From sequence record MG752970.1: 64,000 nucleotides of DNA; one strand, given 5' to 3'. The notes under the pieces are model-generated. The model was not told the DNA's origin, did no database searches, and worked only from the letters and a program-made list of their open reading frames with translations. A program made the position numbers and the translations under genes. Below, in pieces: positions 3,624 through 8,468 of the stretch (position 1 is the first letter of the stretch; the number at the start of each line of letters is the position of its first letter).

Positions 3624-3636
3624 TTTTTCTAAGAAT

Positions 3637-3664
3637 ATGGCACCATCCTGTGGTGCCATTCTTT
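3637..3664 (+). terminator. Intrinsic terminator
   Basis: ATGGCACCA-tcctg-TGGTGCCAT then TCTTT. Confidence 0.7.
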
Positions 3665-3679
3665 AAATTAAATCAAACA

Positions 3680-4170
3680 TCCGTTTCGCTGCCTTTGTCA
3701 GGATGCTAGTCACGAAACGATTCAAGTGAGTTCTTGAATGTAAAGATGGTTCATCGAACATATCGATGACGCTGAATAACCCAGTTACAAAATATAACAA
3801 AGAATTCAGGGAGCCGATCCAGTCAAACGGAGCCCCCTTGGTAGAGTAGCAGCCCTATGGTTATTGTAGAAGTTGCAGATGCTATCAAAAACAATCGAGC
3901 AAGCTAGAGACGGTTCTTGATATGGCGCAATGCTTAAAATGATGGTTGAATGTCCGTTACCATCAATGCTCGTATACTAAAACTCAAGTATATAAAATAT
4001 TCCAGATCAGCAAATACAGATTTTGCTGGATAACTAAATCGTTAATGGTTGCGATTTAGTGAAGATCGGCGTCAACGACACCACGCAAGAAGCACAACCG
4101 GTAAAGCGTTACCTGGACGGGTTGAAGAGAAATCTTCTGAAGTGCGAACCATTATTTGAAGCATCCCGAA
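3680..4170 (+). ncRNA. Candidate large structured non-coding RNA (strand not established)
   Basis: No credible ORF; many hairpins (3720-3739, 3751-3769, 3940-3965, 4008-4028, 4033-4060, 4095-4124, 4124-4137 with GAAA loop) and nested long-range complements 3701-3707/4160-4166 and 3746-3752/4146-4152. Confidence 0.4.
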
Positions 4171-4763
4171 TTTTTTGCGCCGAGGCAGGCGCTCTGGTGT
4201 TCCCCAATCGTCTTACGATTAAGATCGTAATCATTAAGAAGAAACAAAAATTCCCCATGACGATCATTGCAAGAACGAACGCCAGTGAGTGATGCAATGA
4301 GACGTCGAGCAAGCGACAGCTGCTCTGATCTAGTCGACTAGATCAATATTGTAGGAAGAAGTCACAAACCAAAGAATGAAATATACATGAGTTTGGACCT
4401 GCATTAAATAGAAATACATCCTGGCAGTACTTTAATGGAAACTGACTTAACTCACCAGTTTCCATTATTTTTGCGCCGGATCCGGCCAAATAGGCAAAAG
4501 GAGCGGCAAGAAGACACCGCTCAGCTATCGATCATGGCCGCTCACTGGCGTTCGCTTCCATTCCGAAGCTTGTGGGTTCTATCTGTCTATATTGGCAGCT
4601 GATACCCATCTGATCTATCTGGTGCATCTCCGTTCATTCCTGTCTCGAATTGACACATACCACATCATCCGTCTGACCCAATTCATCTGGACACCTCTGG
4701 AGAGGCCATGCCCAGTTGTTCAGAACTAGAAACTCGTTCCGGATCCTAAGATTTAGATAAGAG
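4170..4763. other. Palindrome/hairpin-rich non-coding element, origin-like or RNA switch
   Basis: 20-bp perfect palindrome 4326-4345, 12-bp stem 4433-4467, 14-nt complement 4276-4289/4541-4554, direct repeat TTTTTGCGCCG at 4172 and 4468. Confidence 0.5.
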
Positions 4764-4787
4764 AAAAGGAGCCTTTCGGCTCCTTTT
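4764..4787 (-). terminator. Intrinsic terminator for the gp26-like unit
   Basis: Minus strand AAAAGGAGCC-GAAA-GGCTCCTTTT, overlapping stop of the -1 frame extension. Confidence 0.85.
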
Positions 4788-5034
4788 ACAGTGATGCAAC
4801 CAGCTTTTCCATCCATGTCTTTCCTTTTATGATACCTTCTCGTTTCTTAGTTAGAAACTCAACGGCTAGTTCTCTTTCTGCAGCTGACATCATTAAGACG
4901 TCTTCGTATTTTAAGGAACCTTTTGAATAAAAGGAAATTTCTAGAGCACTCTTGATTAGATTTTCCGTATCCTTTGCAAAATAGCTGATTGTTCTCGTGA
5001 TTAGATGATAATCACGAGACCGTATTACTCGGAA
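4786..5034 (-). CDS. -1 frame extension of gp26-like chaperone (82 aa, missed by ORF track)
   Basis: Open -1 frame after T9 run: FRVIRSRDY...ISFYSKGSLKYEDVLMMSAAERE...LVASL*, no Met in its first 47 codons; ends in a terminator. Confidence 0.7.
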   Translation of the reverse strand, partial: FRVIRSRDYHLITRTISYFAKDTENLIKSALEISFYSKGSLKYEDVLMMSAAERELAVEFLTKKREGIIKGKTWMEKLVASL

Positions 5035-5825
5035 AAAAAAACTATCGGGTTGGTTGGGAGATCAACTTGGAATGGCTGTCCACAATCCTTGCAAGTCAAT
5101 GTGACTTGCTGCTGAGTTCCCCACGCTGAGGCGTTTTCAATGGCTGAACCAATCAAATTCACATCCTTGGTGCTCAGATATCTAGCCCATTCACCAATCA
5201 TTGCCTTATCTGTGACGTTGTCCACAGAGTATATGATTGAGCATAGATTTTTTAGAATGTTGTCTTGAATATCTTCAACACTGGTTTCAGAATCTAATCC
5301 ACCTTGAGCTGAACGCTGCATTAGCTCTACTAGATTCTTATAACGTAGTGGCTCAAGCTTTACACTCTGACCGGTACTAATTGTCACGGTTGACTGCTCG
5401 TTGATTGTGGTTGGATCTAATTCGCGAATGTTCTTTACGAACTCATCAAGATCTACTTCGTAAGAATGTGATTCGGCTTTCTCACAATTATGCTCTGCGT
5501 CGACAGAAAATTTTGAACCGTACGTTGCAACTCTTAGGAAGACCATCAGTGCATCAACATCTTTACCAAATAGTTCATTAGGTTTCTTGATGTCTGGAAT
5601 GCACTCTGCGAAGACTTCATCGATTGCTCTACCAGAGAACAACATGTCGATGTTCTTGAGTTTAATTTCCGCTATAGCCGAAAGTGGATGAACGTGGACT
5701 TCGCCATTTGCTACGTTAGGTCCTAGTTCACCGTTTTGATACAAGTGGCCACCAGATGGAAGCTTGAACACTCGTCCAGGTAGTTTAATTTTTGCTAGGA
5801 GGGGGTTTGTAATTGCTGAATCCAT
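5025..5825 (-). CDS. gp26: gp26-like baseplate hub / tail assembly chaperone
   Basis: LPSGGHLY N-terminus, VFLRVATYG, internal HNC and C-terminal CKDC zinc-like motif; adjacent to tape measure. Confidence 0.75.
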   Translation of the reverse strand: MDSAITNPLLAKIKLPGRVFKLPSGGHLYQNGELGPNVANGEVHVHPLSAIAEIKLKNIDMLFSGRAIDEVFAECIPDIKKPNELFGKDVDALMVFLRVATYGSKFSVDAEHNCEKAESHSYEVDLDEFVKNIRELDPTTINEQSTVTISTGQSVKLEPLRYKNLVELMQRSAQGGLDSETSVEDIQDNILKNLCSIIYSVDNVTDKAMIGEWARYLSTKDVNLIGSAIENASAWGTQQQVTLTCKDCGQPFQVDLPTNPIVFFSE

Positions 5826-5912: not shown

Positions 5913-8468
5913 ATGGCTACAGATCCACAAATAACCGGTCTGATAATCGCGGTTAACAATCTTGTCAATATCCTACAGAAGCAATCGTCCACCGCCGGCA
6001 TTGGTCGTCATGGACAGACCTACGCTACGACGGGTGTGAATGTAAACAGACAACAGAACTCGGGTACTGGGACTGCTAAGAAATCTAAGGAACAAATTCA
6101 GCTTGAAGCTACCATTAAGACTGCTGGTAAAAGTCTGAAGGATCTAACCATGTCGACTGACATGGTGATGGAAGCTTTAAAGAGCATGAAGTTTGGTCTA
6201 GGAACGTCAGCAAAGCAATTCAAGGAACTGCAGGCTAATGCGAATGCGTTAACTAAATCGCTGCTGAATACCCGCGGAACGACCGAGAAGATGCAGGAAC
6301 GTCTTCTGAAGAACATTAAAGATCAGGTTGATGCAAGTTCGAAGTATACAAACGTGGTTGATGAACAAGTTAGTTCATTCAAGAAGATTGAGACTGTTCT
6401 AGATAAGGTTGGTAAAGAGCTTGCCGATTATCAACAGACTCTTGAAAATCTAGGATCTGAAAATTTAGAACAAACTAAGGATACCAGCCAGTTGCGTAAG
6501 GCTATGCGTCGATACGCTAGACGCAATAAGGACGCTGAAGCTATCCTTAAGAAGCACAATATTTCAACTGAGGAAGGAGCGCGTGCTGCCGCTAAGGAAA
6601 TGGATGGTGTTATCCTTGCGCGCAGAAAGTTGAAAGAATCGATTGACAACGAAATTAAGAGATACGGTAAAGAAGCAAGCTGGAAAATTCCTTTAAATGA
6701 GACCAAAAATCGGCTTCTTAAGCGTCATGGTCTAGACAGACTTGCTACTGGTTCTGGATCGTTGTCAATGATGGCAGAAGGGGTTGAAAAGCTATACAAG
6801 GATTACAGAACATATGCGTCCAAGGGATTTGGTGGTGAATCCATAGGAAGCGTTCAGCTCAATTCCTCATTGAATGGAATGACACCTGATCAGTATTCGG
6901 ATCTGATGAAGAACAACATGAATGCTGTTGTTCAAACAGGTGGTGCTAATGGATTCAGCAATGTGTTGTCGTCCGGTCGTATGCCATTCCTTAAGGCGGG
7001 TCTTGGACTGGCCGATGCTGCAAAAGCTTCTGCGAATGCCGTTGATACTGGTTCTGCTAATCTAGGTATCAAGGCATCTGATACTCGTGCAATGGCCAAA
7101 TTTATTCAGTCGTACGCTGAACAATTTAAGGATTTAAGAGCTACTACTGGATTCTCTGCAGATGAATTCGACAAATTTAATGATGCGATGTTGTCGAATG
7201 CAACCATTCAAGGAAAGTTGAGTACGCTTGGTGAAAAGGAACGCATTCAACTTCAAAGTCAGCTCATAGAAGAAGCCAAGAAATTGAAGCTTACCGGCCT
7301 GACTAATGATGCAATGGCTAAAACTATTACCACGCTGAATGATCTACAGGGTCAGTCGGTTGAAGATCGTTTCAGTCAAGGCGCAAACATTAGAGCTGCG
7401 GGTTCAATGTTGGGACTGAATGATCAAGCTTCTCGTATTCAGGCAACGATGCTTAAGGGCAAGGCGGCAACTCCTGAGGAACTCACACAGATGGCTTCCG
7501 ATATGGCTGCCATACAGAAAGAAATTGACCGTTTAGAGAACTCTGGTAATCTGAATGATCAAGTGAAAGCAGATGCTCTCAAGAAAATGGTTGGTAAACA
7601 GTTTGAAGAAACTGGTAGAAACATTAACGTTGCGCAACCTGGTAGACAACTAACATCTGAACAAGCATTAGCCCAGCGTGATCGTGGAGACGTATCAGCA
7701 CCAATGGCAATAATTAATGGTGGAATAGATATGACCAAATCGGTGGTGTCTAATCCATGGGTTGATACATTGCTTGGTGCAGGTGGCGTAATAGCTGCAG
7801 GTGGTGCCAAAAAATATATCGCTAACAAGTTTTTCTCTGGCGGTGCAGGAATGTCAGGAGGTGGGGGACTTGGAACTTCTATTCTTGGCGCTAGTAAAAC
7901 TGGTATGGGTTCTATAACGGCAGATGTTGCTGGTGATGCCGGAAAAGCAGCTTTAGCGGGTGGTGCAAAGGGTCTTGGTAAAGGTGTTCTAGGAAAAGCT
8001 ATTCCAATGCTAGGAACGTTACTGGGCGTTGCAGATATTGGAATGGGATTGTACAACCATGATGGTGGTCAAGTAGGTTCCGGCGTCGGTGGACTTATTG
8101 GCGCAGGCCTTGGCACCCTACTAGGTGGTCCTATTGGTATGGCCCTTGGTGGTATCGCAGGCAGTGCACTTGGTGGAGTAATCGGAAATATGGTTAGTCC
8201 GTCTCAGAAGGACGTAAAAACCATAACAAATGACACGGATGATTCTTCTAAACCGCAGGCAACCGATCAAGCTGCAGCCCAAGCGCTGGCGGCACAAACT
8301 GATCAGCTGATGGGAATGAACGCTAAGTTGAGTGCGTTGATTGATCTTGCAAGCAAGAATCTTGCAATTGAGCAAGAAAAGGTAGATGCTCTTAAGGCTG
8401 CACGCCTCGATGATCCTAGTAGATGGGCTCCAACTCAAGCAAACATGGTAGCTAGCTGGAACTACTGA
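5913..8468 (+). CDS. Tape-measure-like protein
   Basis: 851 aa, helical Ala/Lys/Gln-rich, C-terminal glycine zipper (GGLIGAGLGTLLGGPIG), beside hub chaperone. Confidence 0.7.
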   Translation: MATDPQITGLIIAVNNLVNILQKQSSTAGIGRHGQTYATTGVNVNRQQNSGTGTAKKSKEQIQLEATIKTAGKSLKDLTMSTDMVMEALKSMKFGLGTSAKQFKELQANANALTKSLLNTRGTTEKMQERLLKNIKDQVDASSKYTNVVDEQVSSFKKIETVLDKVGKELADYQQTLENLGSENLEQTKDTSQLRKAMRRYARRNKDAEAILKKHNISTEEGARAAAKEMDGVILARRKLKESIDNEIKRYGKEASWKIPLNETKNRLLKRHGLDRLATGSGSLSMMAEGVEKLYKDYRTYASKGFGGESIGSVQLNSSLNGMTPDQYSDLMKNNMNAVVQTGGANGFSNVLSSGRMPFLKAGLGLADAAKASANAVDTGSANLGIKASDTRAMAKFIQSYAEQFKDLRATTGFSADEFDKFNDAMLSNATIQGKLSTLGEKERIQLQSQLIEEAKKLKLTGLTNDAMAKTITTLNDLQGQSVEDRFSQGANIRAAGSMLGLNDQASRIQATMLKGKAATPEELTQMASDMAAIQKEIDRLENSGNLNDQVKADALKKMVGKQFEETGRNINVAQPGRQLTSEQALAQRDRGDVSAPMAIINGGIDMTKSVVSNPWVDTLLGAGGVIAAGGAKKYIANKFFSGGAGMSGGGGLGTSILGASKTGMGSITADVAGDAGKAALAGGAKGLGKGVLGKAIPMLGTLLGVADIGMGLYNHDGGQVGSGVGGLIGAGLGTLLGGPIGMALGGIAGSALGGVIGNMVSPSQKDVKTITNDTDDSSKPQATDQAAAQALAAQTDQLMGMNAKLSALIDLASKNLAIEQEKVDALKAARLDDPSRWAPTQANMVASWNY

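What the first reader, a model, noticed from the sequence alone, without database searches (positions are those of the whole stretch)
4786..5042. Unannotated -1 ribosomal frameshift in the gp26-like hub chaperone
Seen: the gene ends GTT TTT TTT TCC GAG TAA (nine Ts, plus-strand 5033-5041). The -1 frame is open for 82 codons (FRVIRSRD...ISFYSKGSLKYEDVLMMSAAERE...VASL) with no Met for 47 codons, an 11-bp hairpin (4993-5019) lies 13 nt downstream, and the operon terminator sits at the extension's stop, not the short ORF's. Predicted products 266 and 346 aa. Established: lambda G/GT-type tail chaperones next to tape measure genes use -1 frameshifts; this suggests T4-type gp26-like chaperones can do the same.
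Basis: partly seen in the sequence, partly recalled or inferred. Interest (0 to 1): 0.75.

Follow-up and report, generated by a model that had tools for sequence, protein, structure and literature searches.

The report
Phage tail-chaperone gene with frameshift
A tail-assembly chaperone gene of a giant Ralstonia phage almost certainly makes a short and a long protein by slipping back one base at a run of T's; this is a real but unannotated example of a trick already described for T4-like phages in 2022.

Summary
The window is Ralstonia jumbo phage RsoM2USA. Its gp26-like gene (Pfam PF12322, 266 aa, minus strand 5025-5825) ends just after a nine-T run. The -1 frame stays open for 82 more codons, has no start-type codon for 47 codons, and stops at a terminator-like hairpin.

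Comparison makes chance, assembly error and a separate small gene unlikely:
- 103 of 103 non-Teven homologues carry an in-frame T_TTT_TTY heptamer at the same spot (jumbo phages, cyanophages, KVP40-like, rhizobiophage).
- Wherever measured, their -1 frame continues 54-79 codons past the stop, and the +1 frame does not.
- Substitutions in the extension fall mostly on third codon positions.
- Four independent metagenome assemblies show the same run length.

In cyanophages the extension is what is annotated as a small 'gp51'. In the two Tevenvirinae examined, gp51 is an in-frame 'gp26-like plus extension' paralogue and the heptamer is absent.

So this is a tail assembly chaperone short/long pair of the lambda G/GT kind. 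Citing papers show that Vladimirov, Gautam and Davidson (Virology 2022) already described this for T4-like phages, so I rate it a new member of a known kind.

Two points stay open. The 11-bp hairpin is not conserved, so its role is doubtful. Ribosomal slippage versus transcriptional slippage on the T9 run is unresolved.

The parts
5025..5825 (-). Short-form chaperone ORF (TAC-N; gp26-like; RsoM2USA_375), 266 aa. It carries two Cys pairs and a C-terminal NP..FF motif.
   Evidence: ORF and translation. Pfam PF12322 at 39.5 bits against a cut-off of 24.5, and phrog_150 'baseplate hub'. AlphaFold2 model with pLDDT 85.5. BFVD matches to T4-like baseplate hub assembly proteins, TM 0.7-0.8, E down to 9e-20. 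Conserved residues.
4786..5061 (-). Open stretch in the -1 frame (91 codons plus stop). It overlaps the end of the short ORF by 12 codons. The 82 codons after the T-run would form the C-terminal extension of the long form (TAC-NC, 346 aa).
   Evidence: No ATG/GTG/TTG before codon 48. Substitutions against relatives are concentrated on third codon positions (4/0/19 and 14/10/39). The stretch aligns with the -1 pieces of relatives (A4, A5). hhalign to T4-like 'gp51' pieces gives probability 75%, E 2.5e-5. hhalign to Gram-positive phage pieces gives probability 92%, E 8e-7.
4993..5019 (-). 11-bp stem, 5-nt loop hairpin 13-14 nt downstream of the T-run. It may be a local stimulator, but it is not conserved.
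   Evidence: z -3.55. Present in the 98%-identical relative L010 but lost without compensation in L014, and not general in the family.
4764..4787 (-). Terminator-like hairpin (10-bp stem, GAAA loop, T-rich tail) abutting the stop of the -1 frame.
   Evidence: No terminator-like site lies between the 0-frame stop and this one.
5913..8468 (+). Divergently transcribed neighbour, 851 aa, the likely tape measure protein and thus the expected client of the chaperone.
   Evidence: phrog_167 'tail length tape measure protein' at E 1.5e-9, and a glycine-zipper hit. At 0.15 nm per residue, 851 aa gives about 128 nm; the published tail length is 125 +/- 5 nm (PMC8504454).

Best explanation
The gp26-like gene of RsoM2USA is the phage's tail assembly chaperone gene, and it encodes two proteins.
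- Most ribosomes terminate normally and make the 266-aa short form (TAC-N).
- A minority shift to the -1 frame at the in-frame U_UUU_UUU heptamer inside the T-run. They read 82 more codons and make a 346-aa long form (TAC-NC), whose C-terminal domain corresponds to the C-terminal part of T4-type gp51.

By analogy with lambda gpG/gpGT and with T4 gp26/gp51, the shared N-terminal part would bind the tape measure protein encoded next door. The extension would link that complex to another tail or hub component. Neither form would stay in the virion.

Shown here: the sequence anatomy, its conservation, purifying selection on the extension, and family membership.

Inferred: that slippage happens, its efficiency, that it is ribosomal (RNA polymerase slippage on the nine-T run may contribute), and the binding partners.
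For: 1. Family and context. The gene passes PF12322, and its predicted fold matches T4-like baseplate hub assembly proteins. It sits beside the tape measure candidate. In Bacillus and Listeria relatives the homologue occupies the classical slot sheath - tube - chaperone - tape measure.

2. Conservation of the signal. All 20 Gram-negative-type homologues first examined have an in-frame T_TTT_TTY heptamer 3-33 nt before the stop, with the -1 frame open 64-79 codons beyond it and the +1 frame only 2-29. The same holds for S-PM2, phiM12, a KVP40-like phage, an Aeromonas phage and Cronobacter S13, and for 84 of 84 IMG/VR loci.

3. Selection at nucleotide level. Across 103 loci the codon before the two Phe codons ends in T in 103 of 103 cases. 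This covers nine different codons for eight amino acids, against a background of 52%. The first Phe codon is TTT in 103 of 103, against a background of 63%. The two Tevenvirinae examined keep the FF motif but not the heptamer, and their -1 frame is gene 25.

4. The extension is coding. Window versus L010: 23 substitutions, 19 at third positions, 20 synonymous codon changes against 2 amino-acid changes. Five other pairs behave alike.

5. No independent start. There is no start-type codon before codon 48 in RsoM2USA, L010 and L014, and none before codon 31 in RaK2. The conserved core begins near codon 32.

6. Not an assembly artefact. Four independent assemblies from different samples have the same run length. 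Among the 120 best 90%-identity clusters none is longer than 303 aa. Among the 150 best 50%-identity representatives the match reaches the protein's C-terminus to within about 17 residues.

7. No second copy. RsoM2USA has only one PF12322-type locus detectable by tblastn, so no separate long-form gene is seen.

8. Link to gp51. The -1 pieces of T4-like relatives hit phrog_634 'baseplate hub assembly catalyst' (E 1e-10 to 1e-28). Teven gp51 combines PF12322 (E 2e-43 and 5e-50) with phrog_634 at its C-terminus.

9. Literature. T4 gp26 and gp51 are hub assembly chaperones, and gp51 is absent from the particle (PMC3004832). Short/long TAC pairs and poly-T slippery sites in T4-like phages are attributed to Vladimirov et al. 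2022.
Against: - There is no direct evidence of the long protein. The RsoM2USA virion proteomics analysed only the most abundant gel bands and did not report ORF375, which says nothing either way for a chaperone.
- The RsoM2USA extension itself does not hit phrog_634 or any Pfam/NCBIfam model by HMMER. The link to gp51 rests on position, frame and a moderate profile-profile score (probability 75%).
- The downstream hairpin is further from the site than typical stimulators and is not conserved.
- The gene is divergent from, not upstream of, the tape measure gene.
- Structural likeness to a classical TAC is only a weak hint (HK97 chaperone 2ob9_A: E 2.2, probability 0.25, TM 0.46 on the target).
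- A T9 run is long enough for transcriptional slippage, so the 'ribosomal' part is not established.
Confidence: 0.8

Rival explanations
1. The same two proteins are made, but mainly through transcriptional slippage. RNA polymerase stutters on the nine-T run and produces a fraction of mRNAs with a changed number of U's. Ordinary translation then reads the extension in phase. This can coexist with ribosomal slippage.
For: The run is nine T's here and in the closest relatives, eight in the next clade, and only six or seven elsewhere. It is the only homopolymer of 8 or more bases in 64 kb. From my own knowledge, runs of about nine A or T are the classical bacterial transcriptional-slippage motif. 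The Atkins et al. review (PMC5009743) notes its use in type III secretion genes. The non-conserved hairpin is not needed under this model.
Against: Relatives with only six T's keep the same arrangement, and a run that short slips poorly in transcription. The heptamer is in the ribosomal X_XXY_YYZ register in 103 of 103 loci. Transcriptional slippage would not require that register.
Confidence: 0.3
2. The downstream stretch is a separate small gene translated from its own start, as it is annotated in XacN1, Xoo-sp13, RAS14, S-PM2 ('gp51') and others. There is no recoding.
For: Several records annotate a 53-76-aa ORF there. Some relatives have an ATG in the stretch.
Against: - In RsoM2USA and its close relatives no ATG/GTG/TTG precedes codon 48, which lies beyond the conserved core. 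In RaK2 none precedes codon 31.
- Candidate starts elsewhere sit at inconsistent positions and mostly lack a Shine-Dalgarno-like sequence.
- The linker before those starts is open in every genome and conserved as protein.
- A separate gene would not explain the invariant in-frame heptamer.
- Gene callers found no ORF for the stretch in the close relatives, and a search of 5.8 billion proteins with it found nothing.
Confidence: 0.04
3. Artefact or decay. Either a miscounted homopolymer in the assembly splits what is really a single 346-aa ORF, or the extension is a dead remnant that is never translated.
For: Homopolymers are error-prone, and the record rests on one Illumina MiSeq assembly.
Against: - Four independent assemblies agree on the run length.
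- No fused protein of about 346 aa exists among 120 close clusters or 150 representatives.
- The split arrangement holds in 103 of 103 loci with run lengths from 6 to 9.
- Strong third-position bias shows the extension is translated.
Confidence: 0.03

Closest known systems
T4-like tail assembly chaperones gp26 (short, TAC-N) and gp51 (long, TAC-NC): Vladimirov, Gautam & Davidson, Virology 2022. I could not read this paper; I know it only through PMC10885494 and PMC12846349.
   Same: Same protein family (PF12322). Same logic of a short form plus a long form that adds a C-terminal domain. Poly-T slippery sequence at the end of the short gene in non-Teven T4-like phages.
   Different: The two Tevenvirinae examined (CC31, P545) use two separate, divergently transcribed genes and lack the heptamer. 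RsoM2USA has one gene and must recode. RsoM2USA is a 344-kb jumbo phage only about 25% identical to those proteins. I cannot tell whether that paper covered jumbo phages.
Cyanophage S-PM2 gp26 plus the small ORF annotated 'gp51 baseplate hub assembly catalyst'. The same arrangement is found in phiM12, KVP40-like ValKK3, Aeromonas G2 and Cronobacter S13.
   Same: In-frame T_TTT_TTC (T_TTT_TTT in phiM12) 3-7 nt before the stop. The -1 frame is open 54-58 codons beyond the stop. The extension shares the ...ER... core.
   Different: Their extension is shorter (about 57 against 82 codons) and hits phrog_634 directly, which the RsoM2USA extension does not. Their runs are 6-7 T rather than 9. Their gene is followed by the likely tape measure gene on the same strand rather than diverging from it.
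Lambda gpG/gpGT and the conserved tail-chaperone frameshift of long-tailed phages (Levin et al. 1993; Xu, Hendrix & Duda 2004; summarised in PMC5009743)
   Same: [quoted passage not shown] The second ORF has no start of its own. The gene is adjacent to the tape measure gene. The chaperones are absent from virions.
   Different: There is no detectable sequence similarity, and only a weak fold hint to the HK97 chaperone. The short form is about twice as large and has two Cys pairs. The heptamer is U-rich. The gene orientation relative to the tape measure gene differs here.
Transcriptional slippage on T9/A9 runs (for example type III secretion regulators and IS elements; from my own knowledge and the mention in PMC5009743)
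   Same: A run of nine identical T's joins two overlapping frames.
   Different: The family-wide signal is a six- or seven-T heptamer in a fixed codon register. That points to the ribosome rather than the polymerase as the ancestral slipping machine.

Membership tests
PF12322 T4_baseplate (T4 gp26/gp51 hub assembly chaperone / TAC-N family) | Match to the family model above the curated threshold | tested here: met
   39.5 bits against a gathering score of 24.5, E 6.6e-10. phrog_150 'baseplate hub' at E 2.7e-12.
PF12322 T4_baseplate (T4 gp26/gp51 hub assembly chaperone / TAC-N family) | Same predicted fold as other members | tested here: met
   AlphaFold2 model with pLDDT 85.5 and pTM 0.81. BFVD hits named 'Baseplate hub assembly protein, bacteriophage T4-like' and 'Baseplate hub subunit [Bacillus phage SP-15]', E 9e-20 to 2e-16, TM 0.7-0.8.
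PF12322 T4_baseplate (T4 gp26/gp51 hub assembly chaperone / TAC-N family) | Conserved Cys pairs and the C-terminal FF motif shared by members | tested here: met
   C114, C245, C248, F263 and F264 are invariant in alignments A2 and A3.
G/GT-type tail assembly chaperone with programmed frameshift (Xu et al. 2004) | Two overlapping ORFs; the second is in the -1 (or +1) frame and has no start of its own | tested here: met
   12-codon overlap; the -1 frame is open for 82 codons after the run; the first start-type codon is at codon 48.
G/GT-type tail assembly chaperone with programmed frameshift (Xu et al. 2004) | Slippery heptamer in the zero-frame register inside the overlap, conserved among relatives | tested here: met
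   T_TTT_TTY in 103 of 103 loci. The third base of the preceding codon is T in all of them, against 52% background.
G/GT-type tail assembly chaperone with programmed frameshift (Xu et al. 2004) | [quoted passage not shown] | tested here: not met
   In RsoM2USA the gene is adjacent to the tape measure candidate but divergent from it. The canonical order is met in the Gram-positive relatives HSE3, LIS04 and SP-15.
G/GT-type tail assembly chaperone with programmed frameshift (Xu et al. 2004) | Fold related to solved tail assembly chaperones | tested here: inconclusive
   No significant PDB match. The only low-rmsd hit is the HK97 tail assembly chaperone 2ob9_A (E 2.2, probability 0.25, TM 0.46 on the target, rmsd 4.3 over 94 columns). 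The sequence search of the PDB gave nothing.
G/GT-type tail assembly chaperone with programmed frameshift (Xu et al. 2004) | Two products made in a fixed ratio; neither is present in virions | not testable with these tools
   There are no expression data. The published virion analysis covered only the major gel bands.
gp51 C-terminal domain (phrog_634 'baseplate hub assembly catalyst') | Sequence match of the extension to the family | tested here: inconclusive
   HMMER finds no hit for the RsoM2USA extension. Profile-profile comparison of the jumbo-phage extensions with T4-like 'gp51' pieces and Teven gp51 C-termini gives probability 75%, E 2.5e-5 over 35 columns. The position, frame and ER core are shared.
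Transcriptional-slippage sites | Homopolymer of about nine A or T joining two frames | tested here: met
   Nine T's here and in L010-L015.
Transcriptional-slippage sites | Heterogeneous run length in the transcripts | not testable with these tools
   No RNA data are available.

The most novel reading that the evidence does not exclude
Within one chaperone family the recoding mechanism has diversified. The ancestral state is ribosomal -1 slippage on a six-T heptamer. In the RsoM2USA clade the run has grown to eight or nine T's, so RNA polymerase slippage has become the main source of the long form. Gram-positive relatives reach the homologous extension in the +1 frame. Tevenvirinae replaced recoding by gene duplication. 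RsoM2USA would then be a natural case of a switch from translational to transcriptional recoding at the same site.
Probability: 0.25. Interest if true: 0.55.

Novelty: new member of a known kind. Interest (0 to 1): 0.35.

Why it matters
For this genome the result is an annotation correction. RsoM2USA_375 is the tail assembly chaperone, it has an unannotated long form of 346 aa, and its neighbour is the tape measure protein.

More broadly, none of the 13 records of frameshift-type relatives that I inspected carries a joined CDS here. The downstream piece is either left blank or called a small 'hypothetical protein' or 'gp51'. Hundreds of cyanophage and jumbo-phage records therefore probably mis-describe this locus.

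The comparison also shows in one picture why T4 looked like the exception to the conserved tail-chaperone frameshift. Teven phages carry the short and long forms as two paralogous genes (26 and 51), while their relatives make both from one gene. That idea is already published, so the gain here is confirmation and extension to distant jumbo phages, not a new principle.

Tried and rejected
- **tblastn of the 82-aa extension against 50,697 phage records:** only the phage itself.
- **Search of 5.8 billion proteins with the extension:** nothing.
- **Pfam and NCBIfam on the extension:** nothing meaningful.
- **The search for related loci:** alignment A2 was too diverse. The window protein alone found no relative in IMG/VR.
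- **PDB search by sequence:** nothing. **PDB search by fold:** no significant match.
- **AlphaFold2 of the extension alone:** pLDDT 56, mostly helical, too poor for a fold search.
- **Hairpin as a conserved stimulator:** rejected, because it is not conserved.
- **'Open -1 frame' as evidence in itself:** rejected, because 10 of 47 ORFs in the window show one.
- **Heptamer listing:** it used a wrong codon register (my script error). Those sites were read from the printed DNA and re-checked automatically.
- **Vladimirov et al. 2022:** not held in the library, so its exact scope is unknown to me.

Full report
**Identity of the window.** The region is 100% identical to Ralstonia phage RsoM2USA (MG752970.1, 343,806 bp; window position = record position minus 248,000). 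The record annotates the minus-strand ORF 5025-5825 as RsoM2USA_375, 'hypothetical protein', 266 aa. It annotates nothing between that gene and RsoM2USA_374, which ends at window 3623, and it has no joined CDS. The genome paper calls ORF375 a baseplate hub subunit, sequenced the phage on Illumina MiSeq, and does not mention a frameshift (PMC8504454).

**Observation.**
- The ORF ends a few codons after a run of nine T. This is the only homopolymer of 8 or more bases in the 64 kb.
- The -1 frame is open from 5061 to a stop at 4786-4788. That is 82 codons after the run.
- The first ATG/GTG/TTG in that stretch is at codon 48.
- An 11-bp hairpin lies at 5019-4993 (z -3.55).
- A terminator-like hairpin at 4787-4764 abuts the -1 stop, with none between the two stops.
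- An open -1 frame after a stop is not rare here (10 of 47 larger ORFs). The case rests on the other features.

**What the gene is.**
- The 266-aa protein passes Pfam PF12322 (T4_baseplate, the gp26 family) and phrog_150.
- Its AlphaFold2 model (pLDDT 85.5) matches predicted structures named 'Baseplate hub assembly protein, bacteriophage T4-like' with TM 0.7-0.8.
- The divergent neighbour (5913-8468, 851 aa) hits the tape-measure PHROG. At 0.15 nm per residue it predicts a tail of about 128 nm; 125 +/- 5 nm was measured.
- In Bacillus phages HSE3 and SP-15 and in Listeria phage LIS04 the homologue sits in the order sheath - tube - gp26-like - tape measure. That is the classical slot of the tail assembly chaperone.

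**Conservation of the recoding anatomy.**
- I first examined seven isolated relatives (Xoo-sp13, XacN1, RAS14, Atu_ph07, RaK2, Phosso, SCTP-2; 24-33% protein identity) and twelve metagenome loci (47-98% identity). All have an in-frame T_TTT_TTY heptamer 3-33 nt before the stop. Their -1 frame is open 64-79 codons past the stop; their +1 frame is open only 2-29 codons past it. Run lengths vary from 6 to 9.
- The same holds in T4-like cyanophage S-PM2, rhizobiophage phiM12, KVP40-like ValKK3, Aeromonas phage G2 and Cronobacter phage S13.
- It also holds in 84 of 84 IMG/VR loci: the heptamer is identical in all, the -1 frame runs 57-64 codons past the stop, and the +1 frame at most 13.
- Over 103 loci the codon before the two Phe codons is one of nine different codons for eight amino acids. 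It always ends in T, against 52% elsewhere in these genes. The first Phe codon is always TTT, against 63% elsewhere. That is selection on the nucleotides, not only on the FF motif.

**The extension is translated.** Between the window and a 98%-identical relative the extension differs at 23 bases. Of these, 19 are at third codon positions of the -1 frame, giving 20 synonymous codon changes and 2 amino-acid changes. Five other pairs show the same bias, including within the first 24 codons for the closer pairs. The extension pieces, each read in its own single frame, align across all lineages with an invariant Glu and a near-invariant Arg.

**Rivals.**
- Assembly error is excluded for practical purposes. 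Four independent assemblies have the same run length. No fused protein of about 346 aa exists among the 120 best clusters (maximum 303 aa). Among the 150 best representatives the family match reaches the C-terminus to within about 17 residues.
- A separate small gene cannot explain RsoM2USA, L010, L014 or RaK2, which have no start-type codon upstream of the conserved core.
- RsoM2USA has a single PF12322-type locus, so there is no separate long-form gene.

**Link to gp51 and to T4.**
- In S-PM2 and phiM12 the -1 piece is annotated from an internal ATG as 'gp51 baseplate hub assembly catalyst'.
- The -1 pieces of five T4-like phages hit phrog_634 at positions 58-115 (E 1e-10 to 1e-28).
- In the Teven-type phages CC31 and P545, genes 26 and 51 are adjacent and divergent. 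There gp26 ends in FF encoded without a T-run, and its -1 frame is gene 25 with its own ATG.
- In those two phages gp51 matches PF12322 over its first roughly 170-200 residues (E 2e-43 and 5e-50) and phrog_634 at its C-terminus. It covers phrog_150 to its end, whereas gp26 stops about 50 positions short.
- Teven gp51 is therefore an in-frame 'gp26-like plus extension' paralogue. It is the long form made as a separate gene.
- The RsoM2USA-type extensions link to this domain only moderately by profile comparison (probability 75%, E 2.5e-5). They link more strongly to the homologous pieces of Gram-positive phages (probability 92%).

**What is already known.**
- The 2016 recoding review states that G-T frameshifting is conserved among long-tailed phages 'except T4' (PMC5009743).
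- The 2010 T4 tail review lists gp26 and gp51 as hub assembly chaperones. It calls gp51 essential, of unknown function, and absent from the particle (PMC3004832).
- The PRFect paper and a 2025 Pakpunavirus paper cite Vladimirov, Gautam & Davidson (Virology 2022). They credit it with identifying the TAC genes of T4-like phages, showing that some carry a short gene plus a fused long gene instead of frameshifting, and noting poly-T slippery sequences in the TAC-N genes of T4-like phages.
- I could not read that paper. My independent analysis arrives at the same picture, so the principle is not new.
- What I add is this unannotated instance, and evidence that the arrangement reaches distant jumbo phages and Gram-positive myophages.

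**Mechanism.**
- The fixed codon register of the heptamer in lineages with only six T's argues that the ancestral and general mechanism is ribosomal -1 slippage of two tRNA-Phe.
- No conserved stimulator was found. There is no Shine-Dalgarno-like element upstream. Downstream structure is strong in some lineages and absent in others, including the 79%-identity relative of RsoM2USA. This fits a low-efficiency, slippery-site-only event like lambda G-T.
- In the RsoM2USA clade the run has grown to eight or nine T's. Polymerase slippage could contribute or dominate there, and the protein outcome would be the same.

Noticed in passing
window 3624-4785: A 1.16-kb stretch lies between the convergent gene RsoM2USA_374 and the chaperone extension. 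It has no annotated gene, no tRNA, no Rfam match and no stop-free stretch above 92 aa. Yet it is more conserved in DNA than the adjacent chaperone gene: 92.6% against 87.0% in L010, and 82.9% against 73.2% in L014. Its mismatches show no three-base periodicity. The half nearest gene 374 is the most conserved. Both strands fold better than shuffles (z about -3.2 and -3.5, only 20 shuffles). It is a candidate conserved non-coding element.
   Followed up: partly
L009 3183-3407; L024 3138-3446; L025 3117-3440; L026 3150-3518: In the Gram-positive myophages HSE3, LIS04, SP-15 and GXN1 the homologous extension (hhalign probability 92% to the jumbo-phage extensions) lies in the +1 frame of the gp26-like gene, 64-89 codons past the stop. 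HSE3 and GXN1 have no six-T run; LIS04 and SP-15 have one, but not in the -1 slippery register. The shift site and mechanism there are unknown.
   Followed up: partly
L032 (Stenotrophomonas phage IME-SM1, KR560069.1) 1971-2911: This record departs from the pattern. The annotated gp26 ORF is longer (280 aa), the T-run is shorter, and the homologous extension lies in a different frame relative to the annotated ORF. I cannot tell whether this is a real variant or a homopolymer miscount in the record.
   Followed up: no
L022 3214-3387 (S-PM2), L023 3172-3333 (phiM12), L029 2831-2998 (ValKK3); unannotated gaps in L006, L030, L031: None of the 13 records of frameshift-type relatives that I inspected carries a joined CDS at this locus. 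The -1 piece is annotated from an internal ATG as 'gp51 baseplate hub assembly catalyst' or 'hypothetical protein', or the 160-365 nt are left blank. 765 phage records match S-PM2 gp26, so the annotation issue is widespread.
   Followed up: partly
window 5025-5061 and loci L010-L021: The T-run length changes along the clade: nine in RsoM2USA and its 79-98% relatives, eight in the next group at about 52% identity, and six or seven further out. The register and frame relation stay fixed throughout.
   Followed up: partly
L018 3023-3628 (metagenome relative, 355-kb contig): A GIY-YIG/NUMOD3 homing-endonuclease-like gene sits on the opposite strand immediately after the -1 stop of the chaperone extension. 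It is absent from the other relatives.
   Followed up: no
BFVD hits (for example Ralstonia phage phiRSL1 B2ZYI8 384 aa, Achromobacter phage Motura 438 aa, Klebsiella phage Eowyn 553 aa): Several structural matches to the short form are much longer proteins in unrelated large phages. They may be naturally fused long forms or multi-domain relatives.
   Followed up: no
window 5913-8468: The length of the tape measure candidate (851 aa, about 128 nm at 0.15 nm per residue) agrees with the published tail length of 125 +/- 5 nm. The record calls it a hypothetical protein.
   Followed up: partly
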